From IMG/VR virus record IMGVR_UViG_3300028592_000004, positions 165,211-229,210 of that record: a stretch of 64,000 nt of DNA. One strand, written 5' to 3'. The notes below the pieces were generated by a model that saw only the letters and a program-made list of their open reading frames with translations, was not told the origin of the DNA and ran no database searches. Both the position numbers and the translations under genes were made by a program. Below, piece by piece: positions 357-62,409 of the stretch. Each line of letters opens with the position of its first letter. Positions within the stretch are counted from its first letter, which is position 1.

Positions 357-2273
357 TTAGAGCCCGTCCAAAACGGACGGGAGGGACTTCTTCGGTTTGA
401 GAGGGTCGGCCTCCCAGCCCTGCGTCAGACCCTCTCGACCGAAGTTGAGGGGGTTCATCGCCATCGCCGAGGGGTAGCTCGTCCCAAAGGGATCGATCGT
501 GTCGCCGCGGTGGACAGCCTTGAGCGTGCTCTTTTCTAGGTTCGAGCCGAGGTGCCGCGAGACAACGTCCTCGTCCTGTTCCAGGTTCGCCATTCCGCGG
601 ATCATCACCGGCGTGAACGGCGGCGGGTCGTCGTTGACGTCGATGTTCTGGATGCCAAACTCCTGCAGCTCCTTCACAACCGAGGGCCGGATCTTCGTTC
701 CAATCGTGTAGTGCAGGACCGGCTTCTCCAGGTACTTTCCCTTGGCACTGCCCGGGTGCATCCGGATCGTACTTGCCCGGGGTTGCCAGTTCCGTTCCAA
801 CTGCTGGTACGAGACGATGTCGTTCGGCACCCGGTCATCCAGTTCGTCGTCGAGCCGGACGTGGTTGATCAGCCCGCGTGCAAGAAGCTCGACGTTCCGG
901 CGATGGGCGCCCATGCCCGCCTCCCGGTACGCCTGAGCAAAGGCCTTGGTGTAGTACCGCCGGCCCTCCCCGATCCCCTTGTGCTCAATGATCTCAGCCG
1001 GGTTCGGGATCCCGTCGCTGAGGACGTCGCCAGCTTCGACTTCGTCACCCGGCTTGACCTTCACCTCGTGGCCGTGGCCGACGTAGTGGCGGTCATTGCC
1101 CACGGTGACGAAGAATCCACCCTGGGGCGCCGGGGTGACTTCGTTCACGCGGCCGTCGAGCTTCGAGATCGAAGCCCCGGACTTGAACGTCTTCGGGACC
1201 TGAACGAACTGGTCAATCAGCTTGAAGCCGGAGACAGCCTTGTCGGCACCGGCGACACCGCCGGAGTGCTTTGAGGAGAGCTGCCCCTGTGTCAGCTTTT
1301 CCGACAGGGCCTGGGCAGCGGCGAGTCCAACGAAGTCTCCCCGCCGCGGAAGGAATCCGCGTTCCCGGACGCCGACGTCGCGGCTCCAGACGCCATCCCC
1401 GGGACCGCCGACAGTCGGCGATCGGACAAGGATTCGCTTGAAGCCCTGGTCCTGGATGTCGCGCAGCACCTTCGGCGTCAGGATCGTGTTCCGGTCGTAA
1501 CCCGCGACCGGTGAGGCCAGGAAGGCGCCTTCGTTGTCGGCATCCTCTGTGTCGACCGGCAGCCCGCGGTTCCCGTGGTCGTAGTCGTCCGGATCGTCTG
1601 TCCCGACCGTCACCAGCCGGTGGTTGACCTGGTTGAGCTGCTTGGCAAGGTAGCCGGAGTCTTGCGTGGACCCCTTCGTATCGAGCACCCCTTTCCGGGC
1701 GCCGAACGTACCGGCGAAATACTCCACCGGCGACAGCCCTTCGGAGTACGACCGCAGCACAGGAATCGGAATCGGCCGGCCCTTGTGGTCGACGTACAGC
1801 AGGTCGGAGCCGCGGAGCGACTTCAGGTTCCCGGCGTTACCGCGGGCACCGGAGGCGATCTGCTGCCAGAAGGGATTGTTCTCCTCCCTGCTCTCGTCGA
1901 AGATCTTCTTCTCCATCGGCTCCCGGAAACCCATCGCCGCATCGACGATCTGTTGGGCTCGGTCGTCATCGTTCAGATCGCCCTTGGCAAGGATCTGATT
2001 GAGCTTGCCCTGAAGCTGTTGACGCATCTGCATCGCAGACGGCGAGACGAGCATGTCCTTCAGCCGGAAGGAGAAGCTGCCGGTGCTGGTCGCGGCGTCC
2101 CGTCCGATGTCGGAGAGACGCTTCGTGACCTCGCGGTACTGGTCGGGATACTTCTCCGCGAGTTCCTGGAAGACAGCGTTGAGGCCCTTCTTGTCGAAGA
2201 CGGCGTTCCGACCGCGCATCCCTTCCGGCAGGGCTTGATCGATGAGTAGTCGGCCTAGCGTCGTCTTGAGCAT
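357..2273 (-). CDS. DNA-directed RNA polymerase beta'-like subunit, C-terminal half (bridge helix, trigger loop)
   Basis: SGARG; GARKGVLDTKGSTQDSGYLAKQL (bridge helix); VGLAAAQALSEKLTQGQLSSKHSGG (trigger loop region). Confidence 0.93.
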   Translation of the reverse strand: MLKTTLGRLLIDQALPEGMRGRNAVFDKKGLNAVFQELAEKYPDQYREVTKRLSDIGRDAATSTGSFSFRLKDMLVSPSAMQMRQQLQGKLNQILAKGDLNDDDRAQQIVDAAMGFREPMEKKIFDESREENNPFWQQIASGARGNAGNLKSLRGSDLLYVDHKGRPIPIPVLRSYSEGLSPVEYFAGTFGARKGVLDTKGSTQDSGYLAKQLNQVNHRLVTVGTDDPDDYDHGNRGLPVDTEDADNEGAFLASPVAGYDRNTILTPKVLRDIQDQGFKRILVRSPTVGGPGDGVWSRDVGVRERGFLPRRGDFVGLAAAQALSEKLTQGQLSSKHSGGVAGADKAVSGFKLIDQFVQVPKTFKSGASISKLDGRVNEVTPAPQGGFFVTVGNDRHYVGHGHEVKVKPGDEVEAGDVLSDGIPNPAEIIEHKGIGEGRRYYTKAFAQAYREAGMGAHRRNVELLARGLINHVRLDDELDDRVPNDIVSYQQLERNWQPRASTIRMHPGSAKGKYLEKPVLHYTIGTKIRPSVVKELQEFGIQNIDVNDDPPPFTPVMIRGMANLEQDEDVVSRHLGSNLEKSTLKAVHRGDTIDPFGTSYPSAMAMNPLNFGREGLTQGWEADPLKPKKSLPSVLDGL

Positions 2274-30786: not shown

Positions 30787-30789
30787 CAG

Positions 30790-30860
30790 TTACCCCGCTG
30801 GGATTCGAACCCAGACTACCGGCACCAAAGACCGATGTGCTGCCGTTACACCACAGAGTA
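30790..30860 (-). tRNA. tRNA-Gln(TTG)
   Basis: Cloverleaf, loop CT-TTG-GT, T-loop GTTCGAATC. Confidence 0.88.
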
Positions 30861-31033
30861 AGCAAAAGACCCCGTCGCATGACAGGGTCTTTCGTGTCCC
30901 GGATCGCTATCGGAATGCCGAACGCACGCAACCAGATGGCCCTTTTGGGAACCACGAGCCGAAGCTCACAGAAGACTATTCGCTTTCCGGGCAATTCCAA
31001 CGGGATCCTAGCCGACAGTTGGGGGTTGAGCAA

Positions 31034-31104
31034 TACCGCGTATGGGATTCGAACCCACCTAAGCCGTTAGAAAGACGGCTGTCCTCCCCGAAGACGAACG
31101 CGGC
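31034..31104 (-). tRNA. tRNA-Glu(TTC)
   Basis: Stem GCCGT/ACGGC, loop CT-TTC-TA, T-loop GTTCGAATC. Confidence 0.8.
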
Positions 31105-31108
31105 ATAG

Positions 31109-31195
31109 CGGAAGTCGAGGGACTCGAACCCTCACACCCTTGCGGGCCGTCCAGGTAGCAACCGGCGCCGGCAAACCAGTGGCCGGATGACTTCC
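31109..31195 (-). tRNA. tRNA-Ser(GCT)
   Basis: Loop TT-GCT-AC, long variable arm, G73. Confidence 0.8.
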
Positions 31196-31198
31196 AAG

Positions 31199-31282
31199 CG
31201 GAAAGCCGAAGAATCGAACTCCACGCGTTTTACCGCGCCCCCGGTTTTCGAGACCAGTTTGCCTCCGTTGGCGGGACCTTCC
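31199..31282 (-). tRNA. tRNA-Ser(CGA)
   Basis: Loop CT-CGA-AA, long variable arm. Confidence 0.85.
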
Positions 31283-31287
31283 GTAAG

Positions 31288-31431
31288 TGACGATGCCAGG
31301 AATCGAACCTAGTGAGCAGGCCACATTGGCAGTACCTCCCGCCGCTCTGCATGCGAGCGGACAGTCCCTTCCACCGTTGGCTGATCTGCACTGGCCATAC
31401 ACCAGTCCCTCTGCCATTGAGGATCATCGTC
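31288..31431 (-). ncRNA. tRNA-like RNA (144 nt) with ~70-nt insertion in the variable region
   Basis: Acceptor GACGATG/CATCGTC, D arm CCTC/GAGG, stem ACTGG/CCAGT with loop TGTATGG, T arm CTAGG-TTCGATT-CCTGG. Confidence 0.65.
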
Positions 31432-31435
31432 AAAG

Positions 31436-31511
31436 TAGCAGCGACAGGGATCGAACCTGCATGCACACGGGTCTGAGCCGTGCCGCTCTGTCCAACATGG
31501 CGTACGCTGCC
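31436..31511 (-). tRNA. tRNA with CAG anticodon (Leu), short variable arm
   Basis: Stem CACGG/CCGTG, loop CT-CAG-AC, 5-nt variable loop. Confidence 0.78.
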
Positions 31512-31515
31512 GTCT

Positions 31516-31785
31516 TTATCGACTGGCATCACCAGTCGCTCGCCTGTGATTACGAATCTGCTGGTGCGGTGAGGACGGCTCAGGATAGGGAACACTCGCC
31601 GACCGCACCGTCCATCCCGCTTCCCAGTTGCCATCTTCGTCACGCAGGCGAATCATGCGGCCGACGATAGCGAACTTGGCGGGAATCCAACTCGTGGTTC
31701 GCTCTAATCCACGAGGGGTTAGTCGCTCCAGGAGGCATTGACAGTACAGGTCGCGAGAACGGGATGGAGTATGAGGTGCAAACAT
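31516..31785 (-). CDS. Hypothetical protein within the tRNA cluster
   Basis: 89-aa ORF with RBS AGGAG. Confidence 0.6.
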   Translation of the reverse strand: MFAPHTPSRSRDLYCQCLLERLTPRGLERTTSWIPAKFAIVGRMIRLRDEDGNWEAGWTVRSASVPYPEPSSPHQQIRNHRRATGDASR

Positions 31786-31798
31786 GATGGTCTCCTAG

Positions 31799-31881
31799 TA
31801 CCGAGAGCCGGAGTCGAACCGACAAGATCGCAATGATGGCGAGTCTACAGCTCGCGGGGCCTTCCAATGCCCAATCTCGGT
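31799..31881 (-). tRNA. tRNA-Tyr(GTA)
   Basis: Stem GCGAG/CTCGC, loop CT-GTA-GA, long variable arm. Confidence 0.85.
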
Positions 31882-31969
31882 GGGGCGGGCCACTTCACCT
31901 GATCCGAGTCCGGGAGTGGTGTCACAAGCACCTTCCCTTCTGTCAGGCCGTAGTACCCGTACGGACGTG

Positions 31970-32039
31970 AGACGCCGGTCAGTGTCGAGCTGACCTCACC
32001 ATCGTTTGCTGCGACGGGCCATCCCGGATGGACGGCGTC
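31970..32039 (-). tRNA. Degenerate tRNA-Cys(GCA)-like gene
   Basis: Acceptor GACGCCG/CGGCGTC+U73, loop CA-GCA-AA (A33), T-loop CTCGACA, tiny D loop. Confidence 0.55.
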
Positions 32040-32109
32040 TTGTGGCTGCGACGGGCGGTAAACCGCCACCGCGACGTCTACGCGGTGTCCAAACGTCGCA
32101 GCCTTTGAG

Positions 32110-32182
32110 CACAGCCCCAGGGAATCGAACCCTGCCAATCGAATTTGGAGTTCGACTCGCCAGCCTTGGATCATTGGGCCGT
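32110..32182 (-). tRNA. tRNA-Trp(CCA)
   Basis: Stem TCGAA/TTCGA, loop CT-CCA-AA; D arm weak. Confidence 0.75.
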
Positions 32183-32188
32183 GTGAGG

Positions 32189-32260
32189 CCGGAGCGACCG
32201 GAATCGAACCGGTGACCACCGGGTTTCAACCGATGACTCTACCAACTGAGTTACGCTCCG
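32189..32260 (-). tRNA. tRNA-Phe(GAA)
   Basis: Canonical D arm (CTCAGTTGGTAGAG), loop TT-GAA-AC. Confidence 0.9.
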
Positions 32261-33091: not shown

Positions 33092-33195
33092 GACGTGAGC
33101 CTCCTTGCTCAACGCACCTTAGACCTTCTGATAGCTAAAGAAAAGCACCTGGCCCGGCCGAAGCCGGGCATGATGCTCGTAGATCAGGAGAAACG

Positions 33196-33475
33196 AGAGG
33201 GTCTCCCGGCGCTGTCATTGTTGCGTCCAACTCGAACGTCGGGAGACCCTCTTCAGGCATACAAAGCCCAGGCGACGGGAACGGATATTGAGGCGGGCCA
33301 GCACTCGCACCGCTCGACCGCCGCCTGGGACTACGAAACCCGATCACAGGAACAAGAGCAGGCGGGCCAGCTCTACCCTCGCTCAACTGTGATCGGGCTT
33401 GAATGTGAAAGACCGCCGAACATGACGTACGGGAAGGGAACGTCTGAGGGTAACCTTCCCAGATCGGCTCGACGG
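33196..33475 (-). ncRNA. Cluster of structured RNA modules, including a Y-RNA-like unit (33413-33475)
   Basis: Consecutive long hairpins; two share GGAAC..GGCGGGCCAGC..CGCTC (plus strand); the third has the same CGAACATG..GGTAAC..TCGGCTCG signature as the Ro60-adjacent array. Confidence 0.6.
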
Positions 33476-33659
33476 GCCAGAGGAACCGACGTCCAGGCTG
33501 GGATTAACAGCTGGCTGCCAGTTTCGAGAGCGTTTTTCGCCACCTCTCTCGTGGGCGACCGCGGACGGCCAGGAACGTTCCTGGCAATCCGGCCGGCTGA
33601 GCCGGCATAGCAGTTCACAACAAACGAACTGCAGCCACGGTGGGCTCTCGCCGCTCCCG

Positions 33660-36375: not shown

Positions 36376-36852
36376 TCAGGCCGCTTCCTGAATTGCGACC
36401 TGACCGTAGTAGGCCACCGACTTTCGGGTCAGGCCCTGGTCCGCCATGTCACGAAGCATCTCGCTGTTCATCCAGCGGAGTTCGAGGTGCTCGTCCGACA
36501 GCCGCGGCGGCTGATCCGGATTCTTCGGCTTTGCAACATAGATCAGACACTGATGTGAGTGCGTCGGCGTGATCGGATGAACGTCGACGAACCGCGGTCT
36601 GGGCATCGGGGTGATGTCCGGTTCCAGCTGAGGCGGCACCTCGGCCAGGATCTCGACTTCGAGCCCGGTCTCTTCGTCAGTCTCGCGATGGAGTGCGGCG
36701 AGGACTGTCTCGTTGATTTCGATATGACCGCCGATCGGCAGCCACAGGCCGATCTTCTTGTGGTGGCACATCAGGACTTGGCCGTGCATAACGATGTAGA
36801 GGGCAACGGTCCAGTCGAGAGCGTAAAAGATGTGGGGCAACGTGGTCTCCAA
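36376..36852 (-). CDS. NUDIX hydrolase
   Basis: GGHIEINETVLAALHRETDEETGL Nudix box. Confidence 0.9.
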   Translation of the reverse strand: METTLPHIFYALDWTVALYIVMHGQVLMCHHKKIGLWLPIGGHIEINETVLAALHRETDEETGLEVEILAEVPPQLEPDITPMPRPRFVDVHPITPTHSHQCLIYVAKPKNPDQPPRLSDEHLELRWMNSEMLRDMADQGLTRKSVAYYGQVAIQEAA

Positions 36853-36855
36853 ATG

Positions 36856-36884
36856 AAAAGACCCGCAGCAAACGCTGCGGGTCT
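36856..36884 (-). terminator. Intrinsic terminator after the Ro60 gene
   Basis: 11-bp stem AGACCCGCAGC/GCTGCGGGTCT followed by a T-tract on the minus strand. Confidence 0.7.
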
Positions 36885-36904: not shown

Positions 36905-38530
36905 CTACTTCACGAAGCTCGCCATCACGGCAGGAACGTCGGCCGACGCGCCGACGATGTCGAGCTGACCGGCATCCTTCGGGTCAGCGACCGAGAACCG
37001 CGTGGCCGTCAAAGCACACACGATGAGTTTGGCCGGACGGTTCATCTGCTCGCGGTACATCTGCAGGGCCTGGGAGGCGTGGATCTGCCCCGCCCAGCTC
37101 TCGTTGTCCGTGTAGATGACGAAGACGTCGACCTCGATCTTGTGGGCCAGAGCGTACAACATCGGCAGGGCGCAGTCGGTCCCACCGAAGTTGAGCTTCC
37201 GCATCTCAGCGATCGCTGTCGGAATCGTGTCCCGGACGCCAATCGCCAACGGCGTCACCGCCGCAGTGTCGTACCGGCCGTTACGACCCGCCGTGAAGGC
37301 AACGACATGCGTCTCCTCTTCCGTCCGGATCGGGATCAGAGCCAGAGCCGTCGCCGCCTCCGCCGCCGAGAGACCGGGCACGCTCGCGACGTGGCTACTG
37401 TGCATACTCCCGCTGACGTCGACGCCGAGCAGGTACTTCTTGTTCGTCGGCTCCAGGTACTGGAAGGCCTTGTAGAAGCCGTCGTCGAGGGCGGAGATGA
37501 TCCGTTGATCGACGTTCCAGGTCAGGGACCCCTTCACACCCTTACCGTTCGCGTAGACCTTCGAAGCGAGCAGAAGAGCGAACGGGTGGACCCGTTCCTT
37601 CTTCAGCCGATCCGGGTTGGTCAAGGCGTTCGTGACGAACCTGGTCGTGCTCGACAACGGCTTGATGAGGTCGATGGACGTCATCTTGCCGAGGTTTCGC
37701 ACCATCGCCGTCAGCCCCATGTGCGGCAGGAGGGCCTCCCACACCTTCGGCTCGTTGAGGTACTCGGTCGGGATCGCTTCCCGCGGCAGCTGGTACGTCT
37801 CGATCGCCTTGATGATCTCCTTGGCCGACGTCGCCGCCTTCGCAGCTTCGAAGCCCAGAATCGCGGGAGCCTCGCTGCCGGCACGGCCGTGGGCGATCCA
37901 GTCGAACACCTTGCCGTGCGGACTGTCGGAAGGCACCTTCGGCTTCGACAGCCGGAGGACGTCGCGATGGGACCACGCCTTGCCGCCTTCCGAGACGACT
38001 CGCGACTGATACTTGACGGCCTGATAGGCAGCCTGATCCGCCGGCCGGCTGAGATACCAATTCTGAATGGCACGCTTGAGGCCGCGACCCCAGCCCCGGA
38101 ACTGCTCGACGGCATCGACGAACTGGAACAGGTGATAGCCCGTCCGGCAGATGTCGTTCAACGCAGCGAGGGCCTGCTGACCGAGCTCTTCCTTCTGGCC
38201 GGCGAGGTACGCCAGGACGAAGACCGCCTGGTCGTTCTTCGGCGCCAGGGCTTCGAGGCTGATCCGGCGGGTCATTTCGAGGACACGCTTGGCGTCCTCC
38301 TGCACGCACTTGGCCAGGACGGCGATGCTGTCCTGCGTCATCTTCTGTTCGGTGACGTAGTACGATCCGCCCATCGTGCCGAGGATCAGGAAGCGTTCAA
38401 GCTGCTTCCAGTGATCAACGACGAACGAGAAGCCGCCAGCGTTGTTTTTCTCCATCGGCTTGCCGGGGATCGGCTGCGACTGCGGAGTCTGACGGGTGGA
38501 AGCCGAACGTGCGTAGCGTGACGCGTTCAT
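36905..38530 (-). CDS. rsr: Ro60-related TROVE + vWA domain RNA-binding protein
   Basis: NNAGG, RFLILG, GWGR, KYQSR, SHRDVLRL, DVSGSM (MIDAS), GGTDC, YTDNE. Confidence 0.95.
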   Translation of the reverse strand: MNASRYARSASTRQTPQSQPIPGKPMEKNNAGGFSFVVDHWKQLERFLILGTMGGSYYVTEQKMTQDSIAVLAKCVQEDAKRVLEMTRRISLEALAPKNDQAVFVLAYLAGQKEELGQQALAALNDICRTGYHLFQFVDAVEQFRGWGRGLKRAIQNWYLSRPADQAAYQAVKYQSRVVSEGGKAWSHRDVLRLSKPKVPSDSPHGKVFDWIAHGRAGSEAPAILGFEAAKAATSAKEIIKAIETYQLPREAIPTEYLNEPKVWEALLPHMGLTAMVRNLGKMTSIDLIKPLSSTTRFVTNALTNPDRLKKERVHPFALLLASKVYANGKGVKGSLTWNVDQRIISALDDGFYKAFQYLEPTNKKYLLGVDVSGSMHSSHVASVPGLSAAEAATALALIPIRTEEETHVVAFTAGRNGRYDTAAVTPLAIGVRDTIPTAIAEMRKLNFGGTDCALPMLYALAHKIEVDVFVIYTDNESWAGQIHASQALQMYREQMNRPAKLIVCALTATRFSVADPKDAGQLDIVGASADVPAVMASFVK

Positions 38531-38607
38531 GGGAAGCCTTTCCTACAAAAGAAAACGCCGAACAGGATGCTCGGCGTGAGTGGTCAGCGAGGCCCGCTGA
38601 AAGAATC

Positions 38608-38740
38608 CGTGAACATGGGGCTGATGTCCCTGTTTGACGTGTGCTATCTACTACACTACGGCCCCGTGAAAGAGGGGCCGCTGGGAGTTGCACCCAGGCT
38701 ACGCGATTGGAAATCGATAAGGAACGTCATTCGGCTCACG
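38608..38740 (-). ncRNA. Y RNA-like 1 (YrlA type, with permuted tRNA domain)
   Basis: Terminal helix CGTGAGCCGA/ATGTTCACG; internal T arm, loop-closed acceptor stem, D arm. Confidence 0.8.
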
Positions 38741-38748
38741 AATGCGAA

Positions 38749-38881
38749 ATCACGAACATGGAAGTTGGCATCCAGTCAATTCTTGTGCTCTACCGCTGAG
38801 CTACAGCGCCTTTCGACGCCGACTGGATTTGAACCAGTGACCCCAAGATCCGATGAGAACAGATACCGATCGGCTCGTGAT
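38749..38881 (-). ncRNA. Y RNA-like 2 (YrlA type)
   Basis: ATCACGAGCCGA/ATGTTCGTGAT helix; GGTTCAAATCC T arm, then TAGCTCAGCGGTAGAGC D arm. Confidence 0.82.
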
Positions 38882-38888
38882 GTTTTGA

Positions 38889-38955
38889 ACTGCGAACATG
38901 GAAGTCGTCGAGGGAGTCATCTTAACAGGATAACCCTCAGCATTCGGCTCGCAGT
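38889..38955 (-). ncRNA. Y RNA-like 3 (short, no tRNA domain)
   Basis: ACTGCGAGCCGA/ATGTTCGCAGT helix, shared GTTATC motif. Confidence 0.7.
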
Positions 38956-38963
38956 GTCTGGAG

Positions 38964-39091
38964 CCGTGAACATGAAATTGCAAGTCCGCGTTTTGGTCTC
39001 GTGCTCTACCGATTGAGCTACATGGGCTTCCGCCCCTGGACGGATTCGAACCGCCAACCTCAAGAGATAACGAACTAACTTCGGCTCACGG
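38964..39091 (-). ncRNA. Y RNA-like 4 (YrlA type)
   Basis: CCGTGAGCCGA/ATGTTCACGG helix; GGTTCGAATCC T arm, then TAGCTCAATCGGTAGAGC D arm. Confidence 0.82.
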
Positions 39092-39100
39092 TGTATTGAA

Positions 39101-39176
39101 CCCGAACGTGGGACCAACAGAAGGCGTTTTGGGCTCCGGTTGGGGAGCAAAGGTAACCGTCTGTCTTCGGCTCGGG
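39101..39176 (-). ncRNA. Y RNA-like 5 (short, no tRNA domain)
   Basis: CCCGAGCCGA/ACGTTCGGG helix, GTTACC motif. Confidence 0.7.
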
Positions 39177-39180
39177 AAGG

Positions 39181-39278
39181 CGGGCGATGGAGGAATCGAA
39201 CCTTCGGTAACGATCATCAGTCGGCTCGTTTCCGAGCATGGAATTGACAATCGGTTGCACACCAACGTGCGATCGCCC
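39181..39278 (-). ncRNA. tRNA-shaped RNA with the Ro-binding-like helix in place of the anticodon arm (permuted Y RNA)
   Basis: Acceptor GGGCGAT/ATCGCCC, T arm GAAGG-TTCGATT-CCTCC, internal ATGCTCG-GAAA-CGAGCCGA. Confidence 0.68.
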
Positions 39279-39545
39279 AGTTGGACGGAGTCTACCGACT
39301 CCGTCCTTGATTGCAAGACCAGACACGCGGTCTAGGTCGTCGGTTCACCCTCGGCGGGCGGATTCGAAGCCGGATCCTTGGCCGGATCCCGCAGCAAGTT
39401 CGGAGGCATCACCATGTACATCCCCATCGGAGAGGTGCAGGCCACGACGATTTGCCCCGAGAAGGCAATGAGAAAAATGTCCACAACGTACCGCACGAAA
39501 TTGCGCAACATGGAACATCTCCGGACAGACGAGCTTGTCCGCGGC

Positions 39546-62305: not shown

Positions 62306-62335
62306 TGTGAGGTCCTCCTTCTGAAATGAACCCTG

Positions 62336-62409
62336 TGTCGGGGGCGGGATTCGAACCCGCAACCAACGGATTTGAAGTCCGGTGCTCTAACCATTTGAGC
62401 CACCCCGAC
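62336..62409 (-). tRNA. tRNA with UCA anticodon (opal suppressor; not tRNA-Sec)
   Basis: Acceptor GTCGGGG/CCCCGAC+A73, D arm GCTC/GAGC, loop CT-TCA-AA, short variable loop, T arm GCGGG-TTCGAAT-CCCGC. Confidence 0.9.

What the first reader, a model, noticed from the sequence alone, without database searches (positions are those of the whole stretch)
36905..39278. Ro60 gene preceded by a tandem array of six Y-RNA-like modules of three architectures
Seen: six consecutive units upstream of rsr share a GAGCCGA...A(T/C)G(T/C)TC helix with unit-specific, covarying closing stems and a GTTA(T/C)C-like motif. Three carry a permuted tRNA domain (T arm, closed acceptor stem, D arm), two are short without it, and one is tRNA-shaped. 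A mini-hairpin with a similar stem sits at 38555-38577. Known: bacterial and phage Ro60 genes are typically flanked by one or a few Y RNAs, and YrlA RNAs mimic tRNA. Inference: an expanded, modular adaptor repertoire for Ro60, possibly decoys against anticodon nucleases or tethers for different RNA repair/decay partners.
Basis: partly seen in the sequence, partly recalled or inferred. Interest (0 to 1): 0.8.

Follow-up and report, generated by a model that had tools for sequence, protein, structure and literature searches.

The report
Phage Ro60 gene with Y-RNA array
A jumbo soil phage carries, just upstream of its Ro60 gene, six different small structured RNA genes (a seventh lies 3.4 kb away) that all bear the Ro60-binding helix. 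They come in three shapes, and one of them, a true tRNA shape, appears in none of the Y-RNA papers I could read.

Summary
On the minus strand at 38608-39278, directly upstream of an intact Ro60 gene (36905-38530), lie six tandem units. Each has GAGCCGA paired with AYGYUC, its own closing stem, and [G/C]UU[A/C]YC exactly 16 nt after the start of GAGCCGA.

- Two units are short (63 and 76 nt).
- Three are YrlA-like: T arm, closed 7-bp acceptor hairpin, D arm.
- One is tRNA-shaped, with an open acceptor stem and the Ro helix capped by GAAA in the anticodon-arm position.
- A seventh short unit lies at 33414-33474.

Covariance models built here find the short and long types next to Ro60 genes in most of 159 other viral and bacterial loci. 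Every hit is on the Ro60 strand, and covariation is strong. The tRNA-shaped type recurs in about 17 loci with covarying acceptor stems.

Arrays are common, reaching 5-6 units in viral loci and about 7-8 in bacterial genome bins. The window is therefore at the top of a continuum, not unique.

The shared core has the same layout and spacing as the Rfam consensus for nematode stem-bulge RNAs, which are animal Y-RNA homologues.

Expression, processing and Ro60 binding could not be tested. The hairpin at 38555-38577 looks like an intrinsic terminator. The anticodon-nuclease decoy idea remains speculation.

The parts
36905..38530 (-). rsr: Ro60 protein gene, 541 aa
   Evidence: Pfam vWA_Ro60 1.2e-56 and TROVE 8.1e-38. 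Full-length matches to 2NVO (3e-104), 1YVP and 9NEN.
39181..39278 (-). U1: tRNA-shaped Y-like unit. It has an open 7-bp acceptor GGGCGAU/AUCGCCC plus a discriminator G, a D arm, a 9-bp stem, the Ro helix (AUGCUCG-GAAA-CGAGC-C-GA) capped by a tetraloop in the anticodon-arm position, GUUACC as the variable loop, and a T arm.
   Evidence: Folds. Rfam tRNA 19.1 bits, below the cut-off. The same architecture recurs in 7 other viral loci, with covariation in the acceptor, D arm, Ro hairpin and T arm, and in about 10 bacterial units.
39101..39176 (-). U2: short Y-like unit, 76 nt, closing stem CCC/GGG
   Evidence: Model R1 42.4 bits, E 1e-7 (it is a training member). Fold z -3.0.
38964..39091 (-). 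U3: YrlA-like unit (T arm, closed acceptor with GGAA loop, D arm) inside the Ro helix, closing stem CCGU/ACGG
   Evidence: Rfam YrlA 37.0 bits, full model length. R2 103.9 bits (training member). Arm covariation.
38891..38953 (-). U4: short Y-like unit, 63 nt, with a 5-bp hairpin and the 7-nt loop CUGUUAA after GGUUAUC
   Evidence: R1 57.6 bits (training member). Fold z -3.5. Weak best Rfam match is to nematode sbRNA, with the same layout.
38751..38879 (-). U5: YrlA-like unit, acceptor hairpin with GAAA loop, GUUCUC in place of GUUAUC
   Evidence: Rfam YrlA partial match 32.3 bits. R2 96.2 bits (training member).
38608..38740 (-). U6: YrlA-like unit with a variant T loop (UGCAACU) and CUUAUC
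   Evidence: R2 82.1 bits (training member). The same T-loop variant occurs in L040 and L079. Natural variants in soil run X3 fall in the D loop (38650, 38651) or turn G-C into G-U in the acceptor stem (38660).
38555..38577 (-). Terminator-like hairpin (CGCCGAGC / GUUCGGCG, loop AUCCU) followed by UUUCUUUU, between the array and the rsr ribosome-binding site
   Evidence: The variant at 38568 in run X3 lies in the loop.
38584..38600 (-). Small hairpin UCAGCG-GGCCU-CGCUGA between U6 and the terminator-like hairpin
   Evidence: Fold ('tail'). Function unknown.
39282..39305 (-). 10-bp hairpin GGACGGAGUC-GGUA-GACUCCGUCC, 4 nt upstream of U1 and 27 nt after the stop of the upstream ORF
   Evidence: Read; folded. 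It has no U tract. Its role (a processing or boundary element) is inferred only.
36859..36884 (-). Terminator-like hairpin after the rsr stop codon
   Evidence: 11 pairs, followed by UUUCAUUU.
33414..33474 (-). U7: seventh short Y-like unit, outside the array, in an ORF-free stretch about 3.4 kb downstream of rsr
   Evidence: R1 30.8 bits, E 6e-5. It is the only other window hit below E 1e-3 and was not used to train R1. Fold z -4.5. GAGCCGA and GUUACC are at offset 16.

Best explanation
The region is an array of Y RNA genes, the non-coding RNA partners of the phage's own Ro60 protein.

**Shared core (shown).** Each unit has a closing stem, then GAGC, a bulged C and GA opposite AYGYUC. A 9-nt upper-stem strand follows, then [G/C]UU[A/C]YC at a fixed distance. 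In animals and in D. radiodurans this bulged helix is the Ro60 binding site, so each unit should load one Ro60 ring (inferred).

**Distal part differs (shown).**
- U2, U4 and U7 have only a small hairpin and resemble animal Y RNAs.
- U3, U5 and U6 have a tRNA-like elbow with a closed 7-bp acceptor hairpin (YrlA type).
- U1 is a complete tRNA body with an open acceptor stem, and the Ro60 helix replaces the anticodon stem-loop.

**Expression and processing (inferred).**
- The six units are most likely transcribed together, perhaps with the upstream genes, and end at the terminator-like hairpin before rsr.
- They would be cut apart in the roughly 10-nt A/U-rich spacers.
- U1 would be matured by RNase P, 3' trimming and CCA addition.

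**Function (inferred from known systems).** The different distal modules would link Ro60 to different host partners: PNPase-type exoribonucleases for some and tRNA-binding proteins for the tRNA-like ones. The phage could then redirect structured-RNA decay or quality control during infection.
For: - **Intact Ro60 gene** next to the array and on the same strand.
- **Six clustered GAGCCGA/AYGYUC helices** with unit-specific closing stems and a second motif at a fixed offset.
- **Short-unit model R1.** It finds 109 matches in 79 viral Ro60 loci and 90 in 80 bacterial loci, every one on the Ro60 strand.
- **Covariation.** On the viral matches, 91.6% of cells are paired against 59.8% in shuffles. 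The covariation score is 0.84 against at most 0.22 for slid partners. The Ro helix itself covaries, GC<->AU and CG<->UA.
- **Long-unit model R2.** It finds 102 and 264 matches, all on the Ro60 strand. The T arm, 7-bp acceptor hairpin and D arm covary.
- **tRNA-shaped units.** They recur with covarying acceptor stems.
- **Strict motif census.** 127 units on the Ro60 strand against 3 on the other in viral loci, and 179 against 16 in bacterial loci.
- **Motif spacing.** The NUU[A/C]YC motif is at offset 16 in 240 of 294 distinct units.
- **Old paralogues.** Window units are as diverged from each other as from units of other phages.
- **Natural variants.** Four variants in the array and terminator lie in loops or keep pairing.
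[quoted passage not shown] Thermus phage phiLo Ro60 binds two upstream Y-like RNAs and forms a complex with host PNPase (PMC12135203).
Against: - There is no expression, processing or binding evidence for this phage. No RNA run was listed.
- No sigma-70-like promoter was found, although the phage encodes its own multisubunit RNA polymerase.
- The Rfam YrlA model scores U3 and U5 well below its cut-off and misses U6.
- Alignments A3 and A5 were fitted to my own models, which inflates the pairing counts somewhat. Models R1 and R2 also contain the UUAYC motif, which biases the offset census.
- Nothing shows which partners, if any, the distal modules bind.
- No RNA repair or decay gene was seen among the 24 window proteins scanned.
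Confidence: 0.75

Rival explanations
1. The units are not free-standing RNAs. They are a long structured leader of the rsr mRNA, in which Ro60 binds its own leader at several sites and controls read-through of the terminator-like hairpin (autoregulation or attenuation).
For: The array is on the same strand directly upstream of rsr, with no promoter-like site between them. A terminator-like hairpin sits between the array and the start codon. In at least 10 other viral loci a hairpin-closed Ro-type helix without UUAYC lies about 60 nt upstream of the rsr start, which looks like a leader binding site.
Against: In every species tested experimentally, such upstream units are stable RNAs bound by Rsr (PMC4201824). 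Arrays also lie downstream of rsr (L046, L080, L015). U7 is 3.4 kb away. The open acceptor stem of U1 and the tRNA-like domains make no sense for a leader. The two readings can coexist.
Confidence: 0.1
2. The units are decoys that protect the phage's or host's tRNAs. They would soak up host anticodon nucleases or other tRNA-targeting defence enzymes, with or without Ro60.
For: The tRNA-like bodies of U1, U3, U5 and U6. The small hairpin after UUAYC often has a 7-nt loop with the anticodon-loop signature: C32 in 45, U33 in 54, A37 in 43 and A38 in 43 of 66 loops. CUGUUAA occurs six times, including in window U4. The phage also carries at least 8 tRNA genes nearby.
Against: In the window only U4 has a clear 7-nt loop of this kind. 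U1, U3 and U5 have none, and the long units lack an anticodon loop in the anticodon-arm position. The signature is also that of any U-turn loop. No nuclease, ligase or repair gene was found among the proteins scanned. Nothing was tested.
Confidence: 0.1
3. The region is a decaying array of phage tRNA genes, and the YrlA-like hits are the known artefact of a T arm from one tRNA read together with the D arm of the next.
For: The Rfam tRNA model gives two weak hits that span neighbouring units (38673-38810 at 31.9 bits; 38814-39027 at 27.6 bits). Chen et al. warn of this artefact.
Against: Those tRNA hits need 82- and 147-nt insertions. ARAGORN finds no tRNA here. The acceptor stems are closed by 4-8 nt loops and covary as hairpins. 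Every unit is framed by the Ro-type helix. The same organisation is conserved next to Ro60 genes across phyla.
Confidence: 0.03

Closest known systems
YrlA and YrlB of Salmonella Typhimurium and Mycobacterium smegmatis (Chen et al. 2014, PMC4201824; Rfam RF02553)
   Same: They are encoded next to rsr on the same strand and carry the 5'-strand motif GNCGAA(N0-1)G. YrlA has a T arm, closed acceptor stem-loop and D arm inside the Ro60-binding stem, like U3, U5 and U6. The M. smegmatis pair is processed from one precursor. The 7-bp acceptor stem of M. smegmatis YrlA is cut by RNase P and gains CCA.
   Different: The window has six to seven units, not two. Both strands of the Ro helix are conserved here, whereas only the 5' strand is said to be recognisable in those species. 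The UUAYC motif at a fixed offset is not mentioned in that paper. U1 has a genetically open acceptor stem and a capped Ro helix, rather than becoming two pieces after cleavage. Rfam YrlA scores are below the cut-off.
Animal Y RNAs and nematode stem-bulge RNAs (Rfam ceN72-3_ceN74-2; Kowalski and Krude 2015, PMC4726728)
   Same: The Rfam consensus for nematode sbRNAs has the same layout: a lower stem with a bulged C (GGUC-C-G versus GAGC-C-G), a 9-nt upper-stem strand, GUUAUC at the same offset of 16, a CCC partner, and CUUGACC-type 3' strand. [quoted passage not shown] The short units U2, U4 and U7 are of similar size and shape.
   Different: The match to the Rfam model is far below its cut-off (12.6 versus 38 bits), and no Y_RNA match was listed. 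The review states that bacterial Y RNAs are not homologous to vertebrate ones. Animal Y RNAs are single polymerase III genes, not arrays.
Yrl1 and Yrl2 of Thermus phage phiLo (PMC12135203)
   Same: They are phage-encoded Y-like RNAs upstream of a phage Ro60 gene, identified by the CGAA motif. They were shown to bind the phage Ro60 and to form a complex with host PNPase.
   Different: Two units rather than six to seven, and no tRNA-like domain was mentioned in the passages read. Their sequences were not compared here.
Yrn1 and Yrn2 of Deinococcus radiodurans
   Same: Several small RNAs are encoded upstream of rsr. Both strands of the Ro helix are retained as in animals. Yrn1 tethers Rsr to PNPase.
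   Different: [quoted passage not shown] In U1 the Ro helix sits in the anticodon-arm position and is closed by a loop.
Ro60 loci of cultured actinobacteriophages (Mycobacterium phage Daffodil, Gordonia phage Cashline)
   Same: The same unit types lie directly upstream of the annotated 'Ro-like RNA binding protein' gene: short-long-short in Daffodil and two long units in Cashline.
   Different: Only two to three units, and no tRNA-shaped unit was seen in the four records checked. The units are unannotated, or overlapped by small 'hypothetical protein' calls.

Membership tests
Y RNA (Ro60-associated non-coding RNA, functional class) | Encoded close to a Ro60/Rsr gene and on the same strand (the rule for bacterial Y RNAs) | tested here: met
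   Six units lie 78-748 nt upstream of rsr on the minus strand. Relatives in 159 loci are all on the rsr strand.
Y RNA (Ro60-associated non-coding RNA, functional class) | A stem containing the conserved Ro60-binding helix with a bulged C and the 5'-strand motif GNCGAA(N0-1)G | tested here: met
   GCCGAAG or GCCGAAUG in U2, U3, U4 and U6; GCCGAUC or GCCGACU in U5, U7 and U1. The helix covaries across relatives. In U1 the helix is closed by a loop instead of being formed by the RNA ends.
Y RNA (Ro60-associated non-coding RNA, functional class) | Physically bound and stabilised by Ro60 | not testable with these tools
   Needs immunoprecipitation or a gel-shift assay.
Y RNA (Ro60-associated non-coding RNA, functional class) | Expressed as a discrete small RNA | not testable with these tools
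   No RNA run holding the sequence was listed. Only soil DNA runs were found.
YrlA (Rfam RF02553) | Score at or above Rfam's gathering cut-off (69 bits) | tested here: not met
   U3 37.0 bits, U5 32.3 bits (partial), and no match for U6.
YrlA (Rfam RF02553) | T arm, closed acceptor stem-loop and D arm, in that order, enclosed by the Ro60-binding stem | tested here: met
   U3, U5 and U6. The arms covary in 14 aligned units.
tRNA | Recognised by tRNA models (Rfam RF00005 cut-off 29 bits; ARAGORN) | tested here: not met
   U1 scores 19.1 bits. ARAGORN reports nothing in 38500-39400.
tRNA | Anticodon stem with a 7-nt anticodon loop | tested here: not met
   In U1 this arm is a 9-bp stem plus the Ro helix capped by GAAA.
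tRNA | Open 7-bp acceptor stem with D and T arms | tested here: met
   U1 has GGGCGAU/AUCGCCC, the D arm GCAC/GUGC, and the T loop UUCGAUU with one A-C mismatch in the T stem. Acceptor stems covary in 8 such units.
Animal Y RNA / nematode sbRNA | Score at or above an Rfam cut-off for Y_RNA or sbRNA families | tested here: not met
   The best match is ceN72-3_ceN74-2 at 12.6 bits against a cut-off of 38, E 1.9. No Y_RNA match was listed.
Animal Y RNA / nematode sbRNA | Lower stem with a bulged C, an upper stem, then the UUAUC motif | tested here: met
   The order and the 16-nt offset are the same as in the Rfam sbRNA consensus. Offset 16 holds in all 7 window units and in 240 of 294 relatives.
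Ro60 / TROVE protein | TROVE (HEAT-repeat ring) plus vWA domain above Pfam cut-offs, with full-length similarity to solved Ro60 structures | tested here: met

The most novel reading that the evidence does not exclude
Two linked readings are not excluded.

1. Bacterial and phage Y RNAs and animal Y and stem-bulge RNAs are true homologues. The bulged lower helix, a 9-nt upper-stem strand and the UUAUC motif at the same spacing would then form one ancient Ro60-recognition unit. That would make UUAUC, so far tied to DNA replication in animals, a Ro60-RNP element.
2. A third, undescribed class of Y RNA exists: a genuine tRNA body with an open acceptor stem whose anticodon arm is the Ro60-binding helix. 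It would be matured like a tRNA and perhaps CCA-tailed or charged. This would tie Ro60 directly to tRNA-handling machinery and offer an unpermuted form to test against the proposed dimeric-tRNA origin of YrlA.
Probability: 0.3. Interest if true: 0.75.

Novelty: new variant of a known kind. Interest (0 to 1): 0.6.

Why it matters
What Y RNAs do, and why bacterial ones mimic tRNA, is still open.

- **Three architectures in one array.** This locus and its many relatives show one Ro60 protein served by a set of old, diverged RNA partners of three architectures. That fits the idea that the RNA decides what Ro60 is tethered to.
- **A testable prediction.** The tRNA-shaped class has an open acceptor stem and the Ro60 site in place of the anticodon. 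It predicts RNase P and CCA-enzyme processing, and it is a candidate intermediate for how tRNA-like Y RNAs arose.
- **A link to animal Y RNAs.** The shared layout with nematode stem-bulge RNAs, and the UUAUC motif reported in vertebrate Y RNAs, reopens the question of whether bacterial and animal Y RNAs are homologous.
- **Tractable models.** Cultured mycobacteriophages and Gordonia phages carry smaller versions of the array that can be tested at the bench. At least one published phage annotation places small protein genes over them.

Tried and rejected
- **Megablast against cultured phages.** The region gave no match.
- **Other assemblies of the same phage.** Two other assemblies examined at the DNA level (L003, L004) have an identical array, so they add no variation.
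- **Closest Ro60 relative.** It is only 51% identical, so no close sister array exists for fine comparison.
- **Rfam search of one relative.** Relative L002 gave nothing at E below 1, although my model R1 later found a short unit in the same contig (L028).
- **Generic descriptor.** Any 8-bp stem followed by CGA was too noisy: 1509 hits with no enrichment. The hairpin-closed descriptor alone was also noisy and needed the UUAYC, T-loop and acceptor filters.
- **Long-unit alignment.** MAFFT misaligned the 3' ends of the long units. Model R2 therefore carries only the T, acceptor and D arms, and the Ro helix of long units rests on direct pairing checks.
- **RNA sequencing runs.** None was listed. 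Laying DNA contigs gave only four informative variants.
- **Reviews.** The Wolin-lab reviews PMC10870794 and PMC6542706 are not held. 'Not described' therefore means not found in the papers I could read.
- **Third covariance model.** I did not build one for the tRNA-shaped class. Its count rests on a scripted filter.
- **Terminator hairpin as a Ro60 site.** Rejected, because it lacks the bulged C-GA and the upper part of a unit.
Full report
**What is there**

The window comes from a 229-kb viral contig from soil, IMGVR_UViG_3300028592_000004. Nearly all its genes lie on the minus strand. It encodes a fragment of a multisubunit RNA polymerase, so it is a jumbo phage.

The ORF at 36905-38530 (minus strand, 541 aa) is an intact Ro60 gene. 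It has Pfam TROVE and vWA_Ro60 domains. It matches D. radiodurans Rsr (2NVO, E 3e-104) and Xenopus and human Ro60 over its full length. Its closest relative among 5.8 billion proteins is only 51% identical.

**The six units**

All units are on the minus strand.

- GAGCCGA occurs at 39227, 39173, 39087, 38950, 38876 and 38737. The whole window holds 31 copies on both strands, so about 0.12 are expected in such a stretch.
- Five units have the partner AYGYUC downstream. GAGC pairs with GYUC, and the next C is left bulged.
- The helix is extended by closing pairs that differ in every unit (CCC/GGG, CCGU/ACGG, UGC/GCA, CAC/GUG, CGU/ACG), giving 7-10 bp in all.
- In the first unit the order is reversed: AUGCUCG, a GAAA loop, then CGAGC-C-GA.
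- In all units the hexamer [G/C]UU[A/C]YC begins exactly 16 nt after the G of GAGCCGA.

The units are separated by 9-11 nt of A/U-rich sequence. The exception is the 4 nt between U1 and U2.

**Three architectures**

| Unit | Coordinates | Type | Key features |
|---|---|---|---|
| U1 | 39181-39278 | tRNA-shaped | Open 7-bp acceptor GGGCGAU/AUCGCCC, D arm, T arm; anticodon arm is a 9-bp stem plus the tetraloop-capped Ro helix |
| U2 | 39101-39176 | Short | 76 nt |
| U3 | 38964-39091 | YrlA-like | T arm, acceptor hairpin closed by a short loop, D arm |
| U4 | 38891-38953 | Short | 63 nt |
| U5 | 38751-38879 | YrlA-like | As U3 |
| U6 | 38608-38740 | YrlA-like | As U3, with a variant T loop |

- Rfam's YrlA model matches U3 (37.0 bits, full length) and U5 (32.3 bits, partial), both below its 69-bit cut-off. 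It misses U6.
- Rfam's tRNA model gives U1 19.1 bits, and ARAGORN finds no tRNA there.
- Each unit folds better than its shuffles, with z from -1.4 to -4.5.

**Evidence from elsewhere**

I fetched 79 other viral loci and 80 bacterial loci that encode Ro60 relatives.

*Short units.* A covariance model built from 23 short units (R1) found 109 matches in the viral loci and 90 in the bacterial loci. Every one lies on the Ro60 strand, and most are within a few hundred bases of the gene.

- On the viral matches, 91.6% of cells are paired, against 59.8% in shuffles.
- The covariation score is 0.84, against at most 0.22 when partners are slid.
- The Ro helix itself shows GC<->AU and CG<->UA exchanges.

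*Long units.* A model of the long units (R2) found 102 matches in the window plus the 79 viral loci and 264 in the bacterial loci, again all on the Ro60 strand. The T arm, 7-bp acceptor hairpin and D arm covary. Some R2 matches are partial hits to ordinary tRNA arms.

*Independent census.* A strict motif count that does not use the models gave 127 units on the Ro60 strand against 3 on the other in viral loci. In bacterial loci it gave 179 against 16.

These RNAs are therefore real, conserved and tied to Ro60.

**How unusual is six?**

- Characterised systems have two Y RNAs: Salmonella, M. smegmatis and Thermus phage phiLo.
- Four cultured phage records that I checked have at most two to three detectable units.
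- In the metagenomic sets, arrays of three or more are common. By the model-based census, 25 of 79 viral loci have at least 3 units, and one (L041) has 6. Bacterial genome bins reach about 7-8 (L110, L120, L153).

The window has 6 tandem units plus a seventh short unit at 33414-33474 (R1 30.8 bits; z -4.5). It is the largest viral case seen here but sits at the top of a continuum.

The window's paralogues are 38-74% identical to each other, no closer than to units of other phages. The array is therefore old and maintained, not a recent amplification.

**The tRNA-shaped class**

The U1 design is an open acceptor, a D arm, the Ro helix closed by a 3-7 nt loop, UUAYC, and a T arm. It recurs in viral loci L009, L031, L050/L051, L061, L065, L068 and L079. 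It also recurs in about ten units of bacterial bins, and none on the opposite strand passes the acceptor and D-arm filters.

In an alignment of eight such units, all seven acceptor pairs, the Ro hairpin and the T arm show compensatory changes.

The papers I could read describe two other arrangements:
- YrlA, with a closed acceptor and the Ro stem formed by the RNA ends.

They do not describe this third arrangement. M. smegmatis YrlA becomes a two-piece analogue only after RNase P cleavage.

**The shared core and animal Y RNAs**

The weak best Rfam match of U4 is to a nematode stem-bulge RNA family (12.6 bits, not significant). Its consensus, however, shows the same order and spacing: GGUC-C-GG, nine bases, GUUAUC, a CCC partner, then CUUGACC.

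[quoted passage not shown] The same review states that bacterial Y RNAs are not homologous to vertebrate ones (PMC4726728).

Among 294 distinct units found here, 240 have the motif at offset 16, although the models favour it. Chen et al. do not mention the motif. This is a lead towards deep homology, not a demonstration.

**Flanks**

- The hairpin at 38555-38577 has 10 pairs followed by UUUCUUUU. It is terminator-like, as is a second hairpin after the rsr stop codon.
- Its stem equals the lower part of a unit but lacks the bulged C-GA, so I do not count it as a Ro60 site.
- No sigma-70-type promoter was found.
- A 10-bp hairpin (39282-39305) precedes U1.

**Natural variation**

One soil run carries four differences in the array and terminator. 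Three lie in loops: the terminator loop and the D loop of U6. One turns a G-C pair of the U6 acceptor stem into G-U. This is consistent with structural constraint, but the number is small.

**What remains inferred**

- Expression, processing into separate RNAs, Ro60 binding and the identity of any partner are all untested. No RNA run was listed.
- The decoy idea has one hint. The small hairpin after UUAYC often has a 7-nt loop with the C32-U33...A37-A38 signature, and CUGUUAA occurs six times, including in U4. In the window only U4 shows it clearly, and the same signature fits any U-turn loop.
- No RNA repair or decay gene was found among the 24 window proteins scanned. The neighbours are a NUDIX hydrolase, an epimerase, a PAS protein and a deaminase.

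**Verdict**

- The Y-RNA reading is strongly supported by comparative evidence.
- 'Expanded modular repertoire' holds, with the caveat that such arrays are widespread.
- The specific functions proposed are untested.

It is a new variant of a known kind. The tRNA-shaped class and the animal-like core are the parts most worth following up.

Noticed in passing
window 33113-33659 (minus strand): This ORF-free stretch holds the seventh Y-like unit (33414-33474). It also holds two long-range hairpins that each enclose the repeat GCTGGCCCGCCT (about 33335-33395 and 33265-33327). These may be further small RNAs.
   Followed up: partly
L014, L017, L020, L021, L024, L026, L027, L030, L043, L071, L074 at about 2930-2945; also L009:747, L050:2987, L067:2979, L081:2492: A hairpin-closed Ro-type helix (cuuGCUCGUGG-guu-UCACGAGC-CGAAA) without UUAYC lies about 20-60 nt upstream of the rsr start codon in many viral loci. 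It is a candidate site for Ro60 to regulate its own mRNA.
   Followed up: no
window 38918-38935 (U4) and 66 short units in A3/A7: The small hairpin after UUAYC often has a 7-nt loop with an anticodon-loop-like signature: C32 in 45, U33 in 54, A37 in 43 and A38 in 43 of 66 loops. The middle three bases vary. CUGUUAA and CUGCUAA recur.
   Followed up: partly
L166 (Mycobacterium phage Daffodil) 2075-2420; L165 (Gordonia phage Cashline) 2179-2456: In Daffodil the three Y-like units overlap two annotated 'hypothetical protein' genes (2107-2268 and 2273-2446), which are probably miscalls. In Cashline two long units fill an unannotated gap.
   Followed up: partly
window 36376-36852 (minus strand): A NUDIX hydrolase gene follows rsr directly, after a terminator-like hairpin. 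Whether this pairing recurs in other Ro60 loci was not checked.
   Followed up: no
window 30789-32260 and 62335-62409 (minus strand): There is a cluster of seven tRNA genes (Gln, Glu, Ser, Leu, Tyr, Trp, Phe). A separate strong tRNA has anticodon UCA; ARAGORN calls it SeC, but it is likely an opal-reading tRNA. Rfam gives a further weak tRNA-like match at 31200-31282.
   Followed up: no
window 357-2273 (minus strand): A protein with RNA polymerase Rpb1 domain 5 indicates a phage-encoded multisubunit RNA polymerase. Host-type promoter scans may therefore not apply to this genome.
   Followed up: no
L110, L120, L153, L103, L136 (bacterial genome bins): Verrucomicrobiota, Chloroflexota and Armatimonadota bins carry arrays of about 6-8 Y-like units beside rsr. 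These are larger than any described in the papers I could read.
   Followed up: partly
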